Virus record (IMG/VR): IMGVR_UViG_3300042934_000980
Coordinates: 1-64,000 of that record
Direction: 5' to 3' (one strand)
Length of the DNA: 64,000 bases
Part shown: positions 20,745 through 26,154 of the stretch, one piece after another
Numbering within the stretch: position 1 is the first letter of the stretch
Layout: every line of letters starts with the position of its first letter
Notes under the pieces: model-generated
Seen by the model: the letters and a program-made list of their open reading frames with translations, nothing else
Databases searched by the model: none
What the model was told of the DNA's origin: nothing
Translations under genes and position numbers: made by a program

Positions 20745-20818
20745 TAGTGCTGCTCAACTTAGCCCAACATCACACCGTACTTACTCACCGACGGTGAGTG
20801 TTCCGTAGTTCGTGGGAC

Positions 20819-23038
20819 TCAGCCGTTTGGGGCTGCTGGGTCCACTGGATCCGTGGTACCGGTGTCGCCACCAGTTTGCACGTTCTTGCCAGCGTCGCCG
20901 ATGTTGTCAACGTTTACGCGCAGGTGCGCCAGACGCGACAGGATGCCTTCGTTGCCCAGGAAGTCACGAGCATCTTCGATCGTCAGCGAGCCGATGATCG
21001 GGTTCAGCGCCCAGTGCTTGTAGATCGGGAGGGTCATGACCACACCGAAGTCCTGCTGGTCACGAGTGACGTTGCCCTGGACGAGGATGTTTTCCTTGGA
21101 CACGCAGACGCCGACACCGCCCAGAGGGTTGATGGTATCGTTGGTGCTGGTGTTCTTCGGAACGATCAGGATCTGACCGATCTGGCTGTCGAAGTTCGTT
21201 TCAACGACGTTCAGCGTCTGCTGGTTGCCGATGGAGCGAGCGTCGCCGGAACGCATGATGAAGCGACCCAGGTTCTGGTGCACGATCACCGTCCACTCGA
21301 TCTTGCCATCAGTGCCGCCGTATTCCGAAATCGCGGCCAGGCCGGACTTGGTGTTCAGAGCAGCGGTGATGTCGCTGATTTCGTTGGTGATCACAGCGCA
21401 GACGGAATCGAACACGTCGCTGGAGTTGGTAGCCGAAACTACATCCGCCAGACGCATGCTGCGGTTAACCGCCGAAGCTGTTACGAAGTGCTGACCGGCC
21501 AGGACGTTGGAGCCCTGCTGGTTGCCGACCACTGGAGCGCCGTCGATCGAAGTGATGTACTTCAGGTGCTCTTGAGCCTTGTCGAACGCGTGCTTGGAGC
21601 ACTGGTTGTTGATCACAACCGACATCTGCTGGATTGCGAAGTCCAGGGAAGCCTGGTTGACGTCGTCCTTGGCGATCGGGTACTTGACCGAGATCGGGGA
21701 ACGGCGCTGAACCGACAGGTGCTTGCGAGCATCGAACACTTCGATACGGTAGCCGAAGTTACCGCGGTTGGTGTTGGACACGTTGAACGTGGCCTTCATG
21801 CCGATGACGGAGCCGCCGGTGAAGGTGCGGAACAGAGCGATCTGGTTCTTGTCAGCAGTGCCCAGAGTGATCAGGCGACCGGTGGTCAGTTCGCGCAGAG
21901 CGTGAACGTCAACAGTACCGCCGTTCAGGCGCAGCTCGTTGCCCTGGCGCTGGTAGTTGCCCGACAGCGAGATGTTGAGCATCGGTTCGTAGCCCGCAGT
22001 TTTGAAAGCTGCGAACAGGGTTTCGCCGACTGGCAGGCCGTCTTTGTCCACGACCGAGAAACCAGGATGGTTACGCAGGTGCATGTTCAGCTGACGGTCA
22101 TCGCTCGACTGACCCATGGTGGTCGGGCCGAAGGTGTTGTTGCTCATCGCACGGGTGTCGATGAAGAAGGCAACATTGGTGCTGCCCGATTTGCCGCCCA
22201 GTGCCAGTGCAGCAGCGCTGATCGAGTTGGACTCGATTTCGTCGGTGCTGGTCCATGGACGCTGGCCAGGAGCTTGGGTCAGAGCCAGCAAGTTCGGTAT
22301 GGTGACCGGAACTGCCAGGTACTGAGTGTCGTGCGCTTGACGGCCGTAGGCGTCGCCTGCGATGTAGCTGACTGGCAGCGGCGCTTTCACGTCGGCGGAC
22401 AGGAACAGGTCGCGGGTGGTGTCGTCAGCATCGGCTGGGTACACAGGGTACAGGCTCAGGACTTCGTCCTTGAACATTTCGCCGGTGCGCAGCAGGCCGA
22501 AGATTGGACGCAGGTCGGAAGCCGACTGCCAGGCGCTGTTGCCGTAGGCGTAGGTACCCAGACCAGCAGCGCGAACGGTGAGCTCGGCGCCTTCGTCTTC
22601 GTAGCGGACGGAGATGGTGGTGAACAGGGCTTCAGCGGCCGGGGTCTGCAGGTGAGACTGGGCGTTGAGGGTCATGTTCGCAGCTTTCAGGTCAGCTTGG
22701 CTGCCCTGGAAGTTTTGCATGGAGAAGCCTTCAAGACCACCAACCGACGCCAGGCCAGTCGCAGCTTCTTGGAAGATGCCCATCACGTCAGACGGAACGC
22801 CGTTACGAGTACGGGCCGACTGGAATGCTTCGAAGGAACCTTTGGTCAGAACTTTCAGACCGCCGGTGAGTTGATGTCCTTCGGTACCGCTGACTGTAGC
22901 CAGAGCCGTTTGAAAGCTGTCGAAGCTTTCGTTGCCACTGACGGTCGCCAGAACCGAATTGTTGGAGAGAGAAGAGCGGATTGCACTGAACAGGTTGTTC
23001 TCCGGTTTCAGCGCTGCCGTCAGTTGTTTCATGGCCAT
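20819..23038 (-). CDS. Major capsid protein (phiKZ gp120-like)
   Basis: 739 aa from MAMKQL (AGGA RBS). Strong codon bias; propeptide with G-x-E sites ending GGLE|GFSMQNF; syntenic with dnaB and the nvRNAP subunit. Confidence 0.85.
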   Translation of the reverse strand: MAMKQLTAALKPENNLFSAIRSSLSNNSVLATVSGNESFDSFQTALATVSGTEGHQLTGGLKVLTKGSFEAFQSARTRNGVPSDVMGIFQEAATGLASVGGLEGFSMQNFQGSQADLKAANMTLNAQSHLQTPAAEALFTTISVRYEDEGAELTVRAAGLGTYAYGNSAWQSASDLRPIFGLLRTGEMFKDEVLSLYPVYPADADDTTRDLFLSADVKAPLPVSYIAGDAYGRQAHDTQYLAVPVTIPNLLALTQAPGQRPWTSTDEIESNSISAAALALGGKSGSTNVAFFIDTRAMSNNTFGPTTMGQSSDDRQLNMHLRNHPGFSVVDKDGLPVGETLFAAFKTAGYEPMLNISLSGNYQRQGNELRLNGGTVDVHALRELTTGRLITLGTADKNQIALFRTFTGGSVIGMKATFNVSNTNRGNFGYRIEVFDARKHLSVQRRSPISVKYPIAKDDVNQASLDFAIQQMSVVINNQCSKHAFDKAQEHLKYITSIDGAPVVGNQQGSNVLAGQHFVTASAVNRSMRLADVVSATNSSDVFDSVCAVITNEISDITAALNTKSGLAAISEYGGTDGKIEWTVIVHQNLGRFIMRSGDARSIGNQQTLNVVETNFDSQIGQILIVPKNTSTNDTINPLGGVGVCVSKENILVQGNVTRDQQDFGVVMTLPIYKHWALNPIIGSLTIEDARDFLGNEGILSRLAHLRVNVDNIGDAGKNVQTGGDTGTTDPVDPAAPNG

Positions 23039-23122
23039 GTTTAAGTCCTGTGAGTTGAACGTTTGAAACAAATATATTTGTTTGCGCAAGTTGAGCTGCA
23101 CATAAAATATGTGCAGCAATGA

Positions 23123-23691: not shown

Positions 23692-25224
23692 ATGAACGAT
23701 TTACTGGTGCTGGTTAAGATCCTATCGGCTCTCTATCAGGCTAAGAAGCTAAAAGACAACAACCTGATCAACGAACTGGTCGAGACGCTCGAAGAATTAC
23801 CCAAACCTAATCCCGATGTGTTTCAGCAGGACAAGGAAACACGCGAAAGTATCAGGGCCACGATTCAGTGGCTGCTTAAGCAGCCTAACGACGAGCCAAT
23901 CATAAAATCATTGCTGATGCAGCGTGTGGAGCTGTTTTGCAAGAACGATGATGCGTTGAAGAAAACCATCGAAGCCGGCCTTGAAGACTGCGCCGACGAC
24001 GAGATGACGCGCAAGCTGGTTTACAAGCACGTCACCGAAGTGCGCATGAATGGCGAGACCGAAGCGTTCGCCAAGAAGTTCAAGTCAGCGATTCGCGACT
24101 TCTACTTCAAAGAACTGCACGAGATGAAGAAAGAAGACTGGGGCAACTTGGTCGACATGATTCAAGAGCGCATCAATGCCACTTATGAAGAGCGGCAAAG
24201 TGAGATCGTTCATACGATCACATCTGATGCCCCTGAATCGTTCTACGACGTCATTGAGATGGCGAAGAAGGAGAACAGTAAGGAAGGTATCCTTAAGACC
24301 GGCTTGCAGGGTATCAACGAAGGCTTGGAACCGGATGGGGGCTTCCGGCGTTCGAAGATGTACTTGGTCAACGCCCTGACCAACCGCGGTAAGTCTCTGA
24401 CCATGGCTCACTTCCTGGCCTCGGTGGGGATGTACAACAAGCCGCTGCTGCGTAAAGCGGTCAAGATCCCGACGCTGCTCATGGAGTCCTCCGAAGACAC
24501 CATGGACTTGATCGTGATGCGCATGTACAAGCTGGCGACTGAATCTAAGGCCCAGTACGACAAGTCTTTCCAGACCTCTGAGAAAGAAGACATCGTTGAC
24601 ACCATTGTCAGCTGCTTTAAAGAGAACGGCTGGTATTTGATCGTTAACCAGATCGAAGCCAACAAAGACTCCATGCAGCACATCTTTGACCGCGTGCGCG
24701 CGTTGGAGATGAAAGGCCACGAAATTATCTGGTACGGTTACGACTACTTGGGCCTGGTGCCGATCGACAAGATCCCAGGCGAAAGCAAGTCGGACAAACT
24801 CCAAATCCTGTTCCGTCGTGTGCGCTCGTTTATGATTGCACGGGGCATCTGCTTTGTAACACCCCATCAGCTCTCACCTGAAGCTAAGAAGATGCTTAAG
24901 GAAGCGGACGATGAGTCTGAGGTTTACTTTGCCCGGGAAGCAGCCGGTAAATCTCTGACAGAGACCTCCACCAAGATCACCAACGAAGTGGACGTTGAGA
25001 TCACCATCCATGTCGCCAAGACCAACACCCGCAACTACTGGACGTTCTGTATCGGTAAGCAGCGCGGTGAAGGGTGTGCGCCGAATAAGCGCTTTGGCAT
25101 CTACGACATTGACCCGGTGTATGGTCTGCAACACGATATTCACACCAAGCCTAAGTACCGACGCAGCCTGCAACAAAAGTTCAGTGAGAACGGCGAACTT
25201 GTTAGCGACTTTGATCACTTGTAA
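23692..25224 (+). CDS. DnaB-like (SF4) replicative helicase (phiKZ gp118-like)
   Basis: Motifs LKTGLQGIN...GGFRR, Walker A ALTNRGKS, YDYL, TPHQLS and GKQRG. Start MNDLL at 23692 after GGGAG. Confidence 0.9.
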   Translation: MNDLLVLVKILSALYQAKKLKDNNLINELVETLEELPKPNPDVFQQDKETRESIRATIQWLLKQPNDEPIIKSLLMQRVELFCKNDDALKKTIEAGLEDCADDEMTRKLVYKHVTEVRMNGETEAFAKKFKSAIRDFYFKELHEMKKEDWGNLVDMIQERINATYEERQSEIVHTITSDAPESFYDVIEMAKKENSKEGILKTGLQGINEGLEPDGGFRRSKMYLVNALTNRGKSLTMAHFLASVGMYNKPLLRKAVKIPTLLMESSEDTMDLIVMRMYKLATESKAQYDKSFQTSEKEDIVDTIVSCFKENGWYLIVNQIEANKDSMQHIFDRVRALEMKGHEIIWYGYDYLGLVPIDKIPGESKSDKLQILFRRVRSFMIARGICFVTPHQLSPEAKKMLKEADDESEVYFAREAAGKSLTETSTKITNEVDVEITIHVAKTNTRNYWTFCIGKQRGEGCAPNKRFGIYDIDPVYGLQHDIHTKPKYRRSLQQKFSENGELVSDFDHL

Positions 25225-25242
25225 CTAAAACTCTCTCCGGTT

Positions 25243-25270
25243 CCTTCCCAGGGCGCAAGCCTTGGGAGGG
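25243..25270 (+). terminator. Terminator of dnaB
   Basis: 12-bp stem CCTTCCCAGGGC-GCAA-GCCTTGGGAGGG with a GNRA loop, followed by TTATTTTATGTTTG. Confidence 0.75.
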
Positions 25271-25325
25271 TAAGGATTATTTTATGTTTGAGTACCAAAT
25301 AAGTATTTTTTTATTTGGGTTCTAT

Positions 25326-25614
25326 GAGTATAACTCTAGGCGTTGCAATTCCACCCAATAGGGCATTCCTGTGGTGTGTGAAAATCCAACCTGTGCTTAG
25401 TTTGCGTGTTGTTCTTGTAGCCTGTCTTCAGTCGCCGATGGCCATTGTGAAGCGCTACGTTGCGTTTTGGGAGCATTCCCAGATAACCCTCAGCTTTCGC
25501 TAAGGTCTATCTCTCTAAATATCTTTAAAAAGGCTTTCAAACGGTCGGAAAGTACCTTTGTGTATACCACTGTTTAAACTGAATCCAAACTACAGAACAG
25601 CAAAAGCAACACAG
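25326..25614 (+). ncRNA. Candidate structured non-coding RNA (~290 nt)
   Basis: 25391-25432 pairs with 25578-25614 (~28 bp with bulges) and encloses four hairpins. G-U pairs favour the + strand. TATG at 25323-26 upstream, terminator downstream, and no convincing ORF. Confidence 0.55.
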
Positions 25615-25617
25615 CAT

Positions 25618-25649
25618 AGCCTACAGACCCGACCAGGGGTCTGTAGGCT
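25618..25649. terminator. Bidirectional hairpin
   Basis: 13-bp stem AGCCTACAGACCC/GGGTCTGTAGGCT flanked by GCAT and TATG. Confidence 0.8.
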
Positions 25650-25677
25650 TATGGCTTTATGTCCGCTTGGGTCACAT

Positions 25678-26025
25678 TTAAAGGGTGTCTTGCATCAGCA
25701 GTTGGATCACGTGTTTCTGCCACTCTAGGCGCTTTTGTACCATGTAGGCCACATCTCTACGACTCAGACCACTTGGTAATTCTTCATCGCTCACTTGTAG
25801 GAAAAGTTGCAGCTGTTCAATGCTGTATTCATTCCCTACCAAGGTGGCGTATGAAACCCTGACCTGTTCTTTATGAGGCAACGCTTGGAAGTTCTCTGGC
25901 AGATACCCCAACCCATACCCTTGATGAAACAACTGAGGCTTTACCCACATTGGGGTATGATCTTCAGGTGTGGTATCCGTGGGGTTGAAGAAGACAGTTT
26001 CTTTAAGCTCTTCTTGGGTATTCAT
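25678..26025 (-). CDS. Small protein with helix-extension-helix-like segment
   Basis: 115 aa; contains YSIEQLQLFLQVSDEELPSGLSRRDVAYMVQKRL. Confidence 0.55.
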   Translation of the reverse strand: MNTQEELKETVFFNPTDTTPEDHTPMWVKPQLFHQGYGLGYLPENFQALPHKEQVRVSYATLVGNEYSIEQLQLFLQVSDEELPSGLSRRDVAYMVQKRLEWQKHVIQLLMQDTL

Positions 26026-26069
26026 TGTTGTGCTCTCTTTCTAGTTGAGGTATCTACCTAAAGGTAAAA

Positions 26070-26102
26070 GCAAAAAGGAGGGGATCTTTCCTCCTCTGCT
26101 TT
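26070..26102 (-). terminator. Intrinsic terminator
   Basis: Stem AGGAGG/CCTCCT with a T-tract on the minus strand. Confidence 0.55.
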
Positions 26103-26154
26103 CGCAAAGAACTCCATGACGGTATAAGCATGGTGCCTGAGAGGCAAAACACTG

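What the first reader, a model, noticed from the sequence alone, without database searches (positions are those of the whole stretch)
25293..25649. Candidate novel ~290-nt multibranch ncRNA downstream of the replicative helicase
Seen: the largest non-coding gap in the window, in an otherwise fully packed region. A long-range helix forms between 25391-25432 and 25578-25614 (CUGUG/CACAG, UUGC/GCAA, UGUUGUUC/GAACAGCA, UGUAG/CUACA, UUCAGU/ACUGAA; about 28 bp with bulges). It encloses four hairpins: AAGCGC/GCGUUU (25450-67), UGGGA/UCCCA (25468-81), AGAUA..CCU.AGC-UUUC-GCU.AGG..UAUCU (25481-512) and AAAGG-CUUUC/GAAAG-CCUUU (25529-59). A smaller 5' domain (CCAC/GUGG around AGGG/UCCU) precedes it. The non-Watson-Crick pairs are G-U on the + strand, which points to selection at RNA rather than DNA level. 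The segment lies between the dnaB terminator, an AT-rich inverted repeat plus TATG (25323-26; the phiKZ late-promoter core) and a 13-bp terminator right after the closing helix. I recognise no known family. Inference: a stand-alone phage RNA, for example an RNAP-binding 6S-like decoy, a protein sponge or anti-defence RNA, or a packaging/replication RNA.
Basis: partly seen in the sequence, partly recalled or inferred. Interest (0 to 1): 0.85.

Follow-up and report, generated by a model that had tools for sequence, protein, structure and literature searches.

The report
Structured non-coding RNA in jumbo phage
The 450-base gap after the helicase gene of this EL-like jumbo phage most likely encodes a conserved, folded RNA of about 310 nt on the + strand that matches no described RNA family, and its function is still unknown.

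Summary
The gap 25225-25677 is real and no gene is called in it. It lies between the DnaB-like helicase (+) and a 115-aa orphan gene (-), and is bounded by two terminators of the phage's own type. Only four other lineages hold it, all close relatives (helicase 87-88% aa identical).

Evidence that it is a functional + strand RNA:
- The core is more conserved than four-fold sites of the helicase (0.78 vs 0.54; 0.98 vs 0.78).
- The long closing helix keeps -33 to -39 kcal/mol on the + strand in all five sequences, despite 19-29 substitutions in its arms. The same substitutions placed at random give -18 to -24 (p <= 0.008).
- On the - strand this helix falls to about -20 in most lineages.
- Folding z-scores are negative in all five sequences only on the + strand.
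- In one leaf-surface metatranscriptome, the only genuine contig on 4.5 kb of a relative covers exactly this element.

The TATG "promoter" is not conserved. The G-U strand argument fails for the window sequence alone.

No Rfam match, no conserved ORF, no repeats typical of an origin. Function is unknown; my best guess is a protein-binding RNA. It is a new RNA family of narrow range.

The parts
25243..25291 (+). T1, terminator of the helicase gene: a 12-bp hairpin with a GCAA loop (25243-25270) and a U-rich tail holding TATGTTTG.
   Evidence: Read from the sequence. The tail matches the genome-wide terminator signature of a GC hairpin plus T TATGTTTGC. Hairpin identity among the lineages is 0.74-1.0.
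25295..25343 (+). Conserved single-copy spacer motif (AAGTATTTTTTTA ... TAT..GTATAAC.C.AGGCGT). It could be a promoter, a processing site or a protein site for the RNA; its function is not shown.
   Evidence: Shared with at least 9 lineages just downstream of the helicase stop. nhmmer finds it only here in the 220-kb genome (E 1.6e-8, next hit E 3.7). It is not an early promoter: PWM score 1.3 against 19-51 for true sites, and the match is not kept in relatives.
25342..25390 (+). P0, the 5' stem-loop domain, closed by GUUG (25342-25345) / CAAC (25387-25390). Its inner pairing is uncertain.
   Evidence: The closing helix reads GUCU/AGAC in L002, L162 and L172, which is two compensatory pairs. 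The consensus energy is weak at -3.5 kcal/mol.
25391..25432 (+). P1, 5' arm of the long closing helix.
   Evidence: The arms co-vary, including a bulge that moves in L172 and U:A changing to G:U in L162.
25440..25507 (+). Inner domain: P2 (GGCC 25440-25443 / GGUC 25504-25507), P3 (GAAG.GCU 25449-25456 / AGCUUUC 25492-25498) and hairpin P4 (25466-25472 / 25477-25483).
Evidence: RNAalifold consensus of five sequences and pair counts. P3 and P4 each have one pair changed on both sides.
25508..25538 (+). Largely unpaired linker. It ends in the start of a block that is invariant in all five sequences.
   Evidence: Unpaired in all five minimum-energy folds and in the consensus. UAUCU and AAGGCUUUC are invariant.
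25539..25575 (+). P5 hairpin: AAACGG(U)/(A)CUGUUU, GG/CC and GUAC/GUAU with a variable loop. Together with 25531-25554 it forms a block of about 25 invariant bases.
   Evidence: Present in the minimum-energy fold of every lineage. The loop varies (CUUUGU, UGAAU, UCAAU) while the stems are fixed. A U insertion in the window is matched by a C-to-A change opposite it. No true covariation is seen: all 12 pairs are invariant.
25578..25619 (+). P1, 3' arm of the closing helix. Its outer part also serves as the T-rich tail of T2 for - strand transcripts.
25618..25666 (.). T2, a two-way terminator: a 13-bp hairpin (25618-25649) with the + strand tail TATGGCTTTATGTCCGC. It ends the RNA and also the - strand gene 25678-26025.
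   Evidence: Five compensatory pairs in relatives. The + strand tail reads TATGTTTGC in relatives, which is the phage's terminator signature.
25678..26025 (-). p115, an orphan 115-aa gene that accompanies the element in all five lineages. It is convergent with the RNA and shares T2. It is context only; a functional link is not shown.
   Evidence: No family or fold match.

Best explanation
The gap encodes a structured non-coding RNA on the + strand. Its body spans about 25342-25649 (roughly 310 nt).

Anatomy: a small 5' stem-loop domain (P0); a closing helix of about 35 bp (P1) around a junction that carries an inner domain (P2-P4); an unpaired linker; an invariant hairpin (P5); and the terminator T2 directly at the 3' end.

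Shown: sequence conservation above the neutral level; maintenance of P1 by coordinated changes that work only on the + strand; terminator tails in the + orientation on both flanks; absence of a conserved reading frame.

Suggested but not proven: accumulation as a discrete RNA, which rests on one metatranscriptome contig.

Inferred: the RNA acts in trans as a protein-binding RNA (scaffold or decoy). The partner would be a phage or host protein that recognises the invariant 25-nt block and P5. The rigid P1 and T2 would protect the ends from exonucleases.

Open: whether it starts at its own promoter in 25295-25343 or is cut from read-through of the helicase terminator.
For: 1. Selection. Core identity exceeds helicase four-fold-site identity in every pair with enough divergence to tell: 0.78 vs 0.54 (window-L002), 0.98 vs 0.78 (L002-L162), 0.73 vs 0.66 (L002-L172).
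2. P1 stability. The + strand duplex energy is -35.5, -33.9, -33.2, -35.6 and -38.8 kcal/mol in the five sequences. The same 19-29 substitutions placed at random give -17.7 to -23.6 (sd about 4). The fraction of random placements reaching the observed value is 0-0.008 in all five comparisons between independent lineages.
3. Strand. On the - strand P1 is -39.4, -23.3, -20.6, -19.5 and -26.2. Core z-scores are -4.8, -3.1, -2.6, -2.6 and -4.0 on + and -5.6, -1.7, -2.4, +0.8 and -2.3 on -.
4. L002 vs L162. They differ at only 6 positions in the 5' domain and core.
5. Consensus structure. 94.3% of cells are paired, against 38-49% when partners are slid by 1-3 columns; 2 of 500 shuffles reach this value.
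6. Terminators. T1 and T2 both carry the phage's + strand terminator tail.
7. RNA library. In run X10, the only genuine contig on L002:1-4488 is 2544-2790. This corresponds to window 25351-25609, inside the element.
8. Not coding. Indels of 1-2 nt break every frame. The one ORF start shared by all lineages (- strand ATG at 25616) has variable sites 8/6/9 by codon position.
Against: - Only five sequences from about three independent lineages exist, and three of them are near-identical. Column-wise covariation is therefore modest: 3 pairs changed on both sides, reached by 15 of 500 shuffles.
- In the window itself the - strand folds better.
- No promoter was identified. The early-promoter motif is absent and TATG is not conserved.
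- The RNA evidence is a single low-depth contig (depth 2.2) without direction. RNA libraries can hold DNA, and a low-depth DNA run (X21) also has a contig there.
- P5 and the invariant block show no covariation, so their pairing is not proven.
- The protein-binding mechanism rests on anatomy alone.
Confidence: 0.6

Rival explanations
1. The element is a structured 3' extension of the helicase mRNA. T1 is leaky, so the region is transcribed only by read-through. It acts in cis, stabilising the helicase message against 3' exonucleases or insulating the convergent gene p115 from antisense transcription. It has no trans function.
For: No promoter could be identified in 25271-25343. In sister lineages the conserved spacer motif lies inside the helicase 3' UTR, before the terminator. 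T2 carries the + strand terminator tail, as a back-up terminator would.
Against: T1 is a strong 12-bp GC-rich hairpin with a U-rich tail, conserved in all lineages. A mere back-up terminator or insulator does not need 230 conserved bases with an invariant 25-nt block. The metatranscriptome contig covers the element but not the helicase gene.
Confidence: 0.17
2. The element works at the DNA level as a strand-specific single-strand structure. Examples are a priming or primosome-assembly signal, or an origin next to the helicase gene. G.T wobbles are tolerated in folded single-stranded DNA, so the strand asymmetry alone would not rule this out.
For: It lies next to the replicative helicase gene. 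It has long imperfect inverted repeats, and its stability is strand-specific.
Against: There are no iterons or direct repeats beyond chance and no GC-skew turning point near 25 kb. The element is absent from complete sister genomes, which must also replicate. It sits in a hypervariable accessory slot, is flanked by two terminators as a transcription unit would be, and was found in an RNA library.
Confidence: 0.06
3. The functional strand is the - strand: a 3' UTR or read-through product of p115, or a small - strand protein starting at ATG 25616.
For: In the window the - strand fold is more stable (-80.1 vs -72.8). Hairpin 25488-25505 is a perfect 7-bp stem with a GAAA loop on the - strand. An ATG-initiated ORF starts at the same column in all five lineages.
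Against: The - strand P1 energy collapses to about -20 kcal/mol and the core z-score reaches +0.8 in relatives. T2 stands between p115 and the element, and its - side tail also resembles the terminator signature. The ORF is 26, 45 or 33 aa long with shifted frames and shows no third-position excess (8/6/9). Its ATG abuts the T2 hairpin, so no ribosome-binding site lies at a usable distance.
Confidence: 0.07
4. There is no dedicated function. The region is a spacer left by gene loss in a variable slot, its hairpins arise by chance, and its conservation reflects recent common descent.
For: The range is narrow (five sequences). The slot is hypervariable. Intergenic regions of these phages fold well in general.
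Against: Conservation exceeds that of synonymous sites. P1 is maintained against 19-29 substitutions. There is no translated similarity to the genes that fill this slot in relatives.
Confidence: 0.08

Closest known systems
Small RNAs of nucleus-forming jumbo phages: 11 sRNAs of 201phi2-1, including sRNA005 which is conserved upstream of the phiKZ gp182 homologue (PMC11512511), and one predicted 75-nt sRNA of phiKZ (PMC8244752)
   Same: Non-coding transcripts of Chimalliviridae, bounded by a start and a nearby intrinsic terminator. Three of the 201phi2-1 sRNAs are intergenic. Their functions are unknown.
   Different: Those RNAs were selected as shorter than 250 bp, and most derive from 5' UTRs. 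The conserved one lies upstream of a tail gene. The present RNA is about 310 nt and multi-branched, and lies downstream of the helicase. A covariance model of it finds nothing in phage EL or in four complete sister genomes.
6S RNA (an RNA polymerase decoy)
   Same: A stable RNA dominated by a long imperfect helix formed by its two ends.
   Different: 6S RNA has a large central bubble that mimics an open promoter. Here P1 closes a multi-branch junction. No Rfam match even at E = 10. No conserved UAUG in an open loop was noticed that could mimic the TATG start recognised by the phiKZ non-virion polymerase (PMC4666361); this was judged from the alignment, not searched for systematically.
Y RNA / YrlA-type RNAs of bacteria and phages
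   Same: The 5' and 3' ends pair into a long stem that closes a structured module. Such RNAs are often phage-borne.
   Different: No Rfam match. No Ro60 (TROVE) gene in the phage genome. ARAGORN found no tRNA or tRNA-like gene in the window or genome.
Terminator-ended bacterial sRNAs, including 3' UTR-derived ones
   Same: The 3' end is formed by an intrinsic terminator hairpin with a U-rich tail. There is an unpaired conserved stretch upstream.
   Different: It is much larger and more structured. No significant or conserved target pairing was found in the phage genome: best -31.7 kcal/mol against a shuffled minimum of -31.3, and the pairing segment is not conserved in L002.

Membership tests
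Any Rfam 15 family (4227 models) | Covariance-model score at or above the family's gathering threshold | tested here: not met
   On 24900-26100 at E <= 10 there were only two chance hits of 15.6-15.9 bits against gathering scores of 45-100. The whole window at gathering threshold gave 0. Relatives L002 and L172 at E <= 1 gave 0.
6S RNA | A long irregular helix with a large central bubble that mimics an open promoter | tested here: not met
   The consensus fold has P1 closing a junction with P2-P4, a linker and P5. There is no 6S hit in Rfam.
6S RNA | Binds RNA polymerase | not testable with these tools
   This needs a pull-down or co-purification with the phage or host polymerase.
Y RNA / YrlA | A partner Ro60 (TROVE) protein encoded nearby or in the genome | tested here: not met
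   PF05731 is absent from the 220-kb genome, while the control genomes gave hits. A host copy cannot be excluded.
Retron msr-msd RNA | An adjacent reverse transcriptase gene | tested here: not met
   PF00078 is absent from the genome.
Stand-alone terminator-bounded phage sRNA or ncRNA (generic kind) | Non-coding: no conserved reading frame | tested here: met
   Frame-breaking indels, ORFs not shared between lineages, and no codon-position bias.
Stand-alone terminator-bounded phage sRNA or ncRNA (generic kind) | An intrinsic terminator at the 3' end, in the orientation of the RNA | tested here: met
   The T2 hairpin has 5 compensatory pairs and the + strand tail signature.
Stand-alone terminator-bounded phage sRNA or ncRNA (generic kind) | A secondary structure conserved through compensatory change | tested here: met
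   P1 energies and the random-placement test and pair counts. The test is limited to about three independent lineages.
Stand-alone terminator-bounded phage sRNA or ncRNA (generic kind) | Its own promoter | tested here: inconclusive
   There is no early-promoter match. TATG is not conserved. The conserved single-copy motif at 25295-25343 has unknown function.
Stand-alone terminator-bounded phage sRNA or ncRNA (generic kind) | A discrete transcript | tested here: inconclusive
   One 248-nt contig from a metatranscriptome covers only the element. Its depth is 2.2 and it carries no strand information.
Jumbo-phage sRNA005 / phiKZ gp182 5' UTR sRNA | Homologous sequence and location upstream of the conserved tail gene | tested here: not met
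   The locus is different (downstream of the helicase). Model R1 finds nothing in phage EL, which is reported to hold the sRNA005 homologue (PMC11512511).
Replication origin or single-strand initiation signal | Iterons or an AT-rich unwinding region, a skew turning point, and presence in all replicating relatives | tested here: not met
   No repeat families beyond chance, no skew signal, and absence from complete sister genomes. Function at the DNA level itself is not testable here.

The most novel reading that the evidence does not exclude
The RNA and its constant neighbour p115 form an accessory cassette in a hypervariable slot of nucleus-forming jumbo phages. In this reading the RNA is an RNA-based counter-defence or host-takeover factor. 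It would be a decoy that sequesters a host immune sensor, a nuclease or an RNA-binding regulator. Alternatively it would act on the phage's own non-virion polymerase or on mRNA export from the phage nucleus.
Probability: 0.12. Interest if true: 0.85.

Novelty: new member of a known kind. Interest (0 to 1): 0.55.

Why it matters
Very few non-coding RNAs of nucleus-forming jumbo phages are known. The literature read here describes short sRNAs of unknown function in 201phi2-1 and one unconfirmed prediction in phiKZ (PMC11512511, PMC8244752).

This would be a large, multi-branched RNA with comparative support, a defined strand and an invariant 25-nt block. These phages separate transcription from translation, so such an RNA might reveal RNA trafficking, polymerase control or RNA-based counter-defence.

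The limits are real. The range is narrow (five sequences from plant-surface, silage, dairy, freshwater and wastewater samples). No cultured isolate is known, and nothing points to a specific function.

Tried and rejected
- Known families: Rfam and tRNA/tmRNA search gave nothing.
- Phage GenBank records by DNA: no match. By protein, phage EL is the nearest isolate at 65%.
- IMG/VR by helicase: 27 loci, of which only L002 holds the element.
- IMG/VR by two DNA patterns: one found L002 again; the other was L002-specific by my error and gave only chance hits.
- The single metagenome scan gave two chance, non-homologous hits.
- Pseudogene remnant: tblastx against the genes filling this slot in relatives found nothing.
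- Conserved small ORFs: rejected.
- Repeats or iterons: none. Sigma-70 promoters: none. GC skew: flat.
- Early-promoter PWM: the weak hit at 25327 (score 1.3) is far below true sites and not conserved.
- phiKZ middle-promoter motif: not enriched in this genome.
- Covariance model R1 (220 positions): finds only the five known copies. It finds nothing in 29 related loci, four complete sister genomes or phage EL.
- Base-pairing targets in the phage's translation-initiation regions: not better than shuffles and not conserved.
- RsmA/CsrA sponge idea: I counted only two GGA motifs by eye, and there is no Rfam hit.
- p115: no Pfam, PHROG or Atlas lead. The AlphaFold model is mediocre (pLDDT 64, helical C-terminal half) and has no fold match at E <= 0.001 in PDB or BFVD.
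- No RNA run holds the window's own version of the element.

Full report
**Where we are.** The window is the first 64 kb of a 220,495-bp virus record that is 96% complete. ORF 23638/23692-25224 (+) is a divergent DnaB-like helicase (PF20307, E 8e-109). Its best match among isolates is Pseudomonas phage EL (65% aa), then Erwinia phages RisingSun and Joad (59%). Neighbouring genes include the phiKZ-type major capsid protein. The phage is therefore an EL-like member of the nucleus-forming jumbo phages.

**The observation.** The gap 25225-25677 (453 nt) lies between the helicase stop and the stop of a convergent 115-aa gene (25678-26025, -). Gene callers placed no gene in it in any of six public assemblies. 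The ORF 25315/25324-25503 is not shared by relatives. With that ORF set aside, this is the largest gap in the window. The whole 357 nt has z = -6.7, but the two terminators inflate this. Unrelated gaps at the same position in relatives reach -6.3 and -3.9. Without the terminators, the core 25390-25620 still has z = -4.8 on the + strand, but -5.6 on the - strand.

**Relatives.** The helicase found 27 IMG/VR loci, and only L002 (88% aa) holds the element. Protein look-ups added L162 (identical to L163 and L164), L172 and L173. That gives five distinct sequences from about three independent lineages: the window; L002, L173 and L162; and L172. A covariance model of the core (R1, 220 positions) scores them at 191-265 bits. 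It finds nothing in 29 other related loci, in four complete sister genomes or in phage EL. The element is thus restricted to a small clade. In sister lineages the slot between the helicase and the conserved 445-aa gene holds quite different cargo. Examples are a Kelch-repeat protein, a glycine-rich protein, various small ORFs, and four small genes in EL. The 115-aa gene accompanies the element in all five lineages.

**Selection.** Identity at four-fold degenerate sites of the helicase is 0.54-0.58 between the window and the others, 0.78 between L002 and L162, and 0.62-0.66 for L172 against the L002 group. The core of the element scores 0.77-0.78, 0.98 and 0.72-0.73 in the same pairs; window against L172 gives 0.65 against 0.57. 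The AT-rich spacer just after T1 evolves much faster: L002 and L162 differ at about 18 positions in 50 nt there, against 6 positions in 290 nt downstream. Indels of one and two bases break every reading frame. The only ORF start common to all lineages is a - strand ATG at 25616. It gives products of 26, 45 and 33 aa, and its variable sites fall 8/6/9 on codon positions 1/2/3. tblastx against the cargo genes of relatives finds nothing. The region is constrained, non-coding sequence.

**Structure.** Five-sequence RNAalifold and the individual folds agree on the following architecture.
- P0 (25342-25390) is closed by GUUG/CAAC. This reads GUCU/AGAC in the other lineages, which is two compensatory pairs.
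- P1 (25391-25432 with 25578-25619) is about 35 bp with bulges.
- An unpaired linker follows.
- P5 is at 25539-25575.

Hairpin 1 changes C:G to A.A or A.G. The inner stem of hairpin 3 is lost to a 3-nt deletion in L172. P3 replaces both. P5 appears in every fold, has fixed stems with a variable loop, and in the window gains a U:A pair through an insertion plus a C-to-A change. P5 shows no true covariation, however. A block of about 25 nt (25531-25554) is invariant in all five sequences, including the fast-evolving L172.

**P1 is maintained, and only on the + strand.**
- The + strand duplex energies of the two arms are -35.5, -33.9, -33.2, -35.6 and -38.8 kcal/mol. The - strand values are -39.4, -23.3, -20.6, -19.5 and -26.2.
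- The arms differ by 19-29 substitutions between independent lineages. Placing the same substitutions at random positions gives -17.7 to -23.6 (sd about 4). The observed value is reached in 0-0.8% of 1000 trials in each of five comparisons.
- In L172 the bulge moves by four positions, and five substitutions on the two arms rebuild a continuous helix. Two U:A pairs of the UUGC/GCAA segment become U:G.
- L002 and L162 differ at six positions in the 5' domain and core. Two of these are the two sides of one P1 pair (U:A to G:U, an A.C mismatch on the other strand).
- Core z-scores are negative in all five sequences on the + strand (-2.6 to -4.8) but range from -5.6 to +0.8 on the - strand.
- Column-wise counting on the model-based alignment gives 94.3% paired cells, against 38-49% for slid partners. 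Three pairs change on both sides, and 2-19 of 500 shuffles reach the observed measures. This support is modest, as expected from five sequences with a register shift.

**Flanks.** This phage has a recognisable terminator type: a GC-rich hairpin followed by T TATGTTTGC. It has 14 intergenic copies, several at convergent gene junctions where a promoter would make no sense. T1 (25243-25291) and T2 (25618-25666) both carry this tail in the + orientation. In relatives the T2 tail reads exactly TATGTTTGC. The T2 stem shows five compensatory pairs. T2 also ends the - strand gene, and its - side tail overlaps the outer part of the P1 3' arm. The layout T1, spacer, RNA body, T2 fits a + strand unit that ends at T2.

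**The start is unknown.** TATG at 25323 reads TATT in all relatives. The early-promoter motif of this phage (..CC TATATTAC, more than 12 copies, all on the - strand) is absent. The best PWM score in the gap is 1.3, against 19-51 for true sites, and the hit is not kept in relatives. A single-copy motif at 25295-25343 is conserved just downstream of the helicase in at least nine lineages, including ones that lack the RNA. Its role is open.

**Expression.** No RNA run holds the window's own version. The L002 version occurs in about 20 runs from leaf, phyllosphere, silage, dairy, freshwater and wastewater samples. One of these is a phyllosphere metatranscriptome, X10. Laid on L002:1-4488, X10 gives one genuine contig: 248 nt with 2 differences, covering 2544-2790. 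This corresponds to window 25351-25609, from P0 to the end of P1. Nothing lies on the helicase, p115 or the 445-aa gene. By my own estimate, a single random 248-nt piece would fall wholly between T1 and T2 in about 3% of cases. Contigs carry no strand, the depth is 2.2, and RNA libraries can hold DNA. I count this as suggestive only.

**What it is not.**
- There is no Rfam match at any threshold tried and no tRNA or tmRNA.
- The fold is not 6S-like, because it has a junction and not a central bubble.
- The genome has no Ro60/TROVE gene and no reverse transcriptase.
- There are no iterons and no skew signal.
- Pairing of the unpaired linker with phage translation-initiation regions is no better than for shuffled queries and is not conserved.
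- p115 gave no family, Atlas or fold lead.

**Mechanism.** The following is shown: a constrained, non-coding element whose long helix is kept on the + strand, bounded by + oriented terminators. The following is inferred: a stable RNA of about 310 nt ending at T2. The invariant block, where stems stay fixed even though compensation would be tolerated, suggests recognition of specific sequence. A closed multi-branch body with both ends protected is more typical of protein-binding RNAs than of base-pairing sRNAs. I therefore favour a protein-binding scaffold or decoy, with low confidence in that particular step. The position in a hypervariable accessory slot, together with an orphan gene, leaves room for a counter-defence or host-takeover role.

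**Verdict.** This is a real feature and a new RNA family of narrow range. The function is unknown.

Noticed in passing
Whole genome, for example window 20707 (-), 45076 (+), 51104 (-), 59488 (+), 60341 (-): The phage uses a sequence-conserved terminator: a GC-rich hairpin (often CCCCTACCCC..GGGGTAGGGG) followed by T TATGTTTGC, with AATAA on the other side. The tail contains TATG, the phiKZ late-promoter core. Several copies sit at convergent junctions, where only termination makes sense.
   Followed up: partly
Window 15379 (-) and 49230 (-); further copies beyond the window (e.g. genome 93139, 116246, 157697): An early-promoter-like motif, a T-rich block followed by (A/G)A(A/C)CC TATATTAC. At least 12 strong copies, all on the - strand, mostly intergenic.
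   Followed up: partly
Window 25295-25343; L004, L005, L007, L167 and L171 just after the helicase stop: A single-copy non-coding motif (AAAACAGTAAyTTTTwA ... yTATyrGTATwAA) is conserved downstream of the helicase in at least 9 lineages, whatever follows it. In the window it lies after T1; in sister lineages it lies before the terminator. Flanking stems differ between lineages around a constant GUAUwAA. Its function is unknown.
   Followed up: partly
Between the helicase and the 445-aa gene: window 25225-26154; L011:4684-5742; L168:4632-5297; L158:4599-6513: This slot is hypervariable among relatives. It holds a Kelch-repeat protein (E 7e-60), a glycine-rich protein, several unknown small ORFs, and four small genes in phage EL. 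It looks like an accessory-gene hotspot.
   Followed up: partly
Window 25678-26025 (-): The orphan gene p115 has only four known relatives. All share an invariant motif F(H/R)QGYGLGYLPE and a helical C-terminal half. L173's copy is only 50% identical to the window's, although its RNA element is nearly identical to that of L002. This suggests recombination between the gene and the RNA.
   Followed up: partly
Window 25539-25616 (-): A small - strand ORF starts at the same ATG in all five lineages (next to T2) and begins ML.C.CC. Its lengths differ (26, 33 or 45 aa) and it has no codon-position bias. It is probably a by-product of the TATG tail and the P1 arm.
   Followed up: yes
Whole genome (220,495 bp): ARAGORN finds no tRNA or tmRNA gene in the whole genome.
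   Followed up: no
Window 20798-23044 (+) versus 20819-23119 (-): A 748-aa open frame lies on the strand opposite the major capsid gene. By comparison with EL the capsid gene is the - strand ORF, so the + strand ORF is a shadow frame.
   Followed up: no
L171:1930-2297: In the 77%-identity lineage L171, the spacer motif is followed by about 110 nt of different non-coding sequence and then a terminator. This may be a different small RNA at the same place.
   Followed up: no
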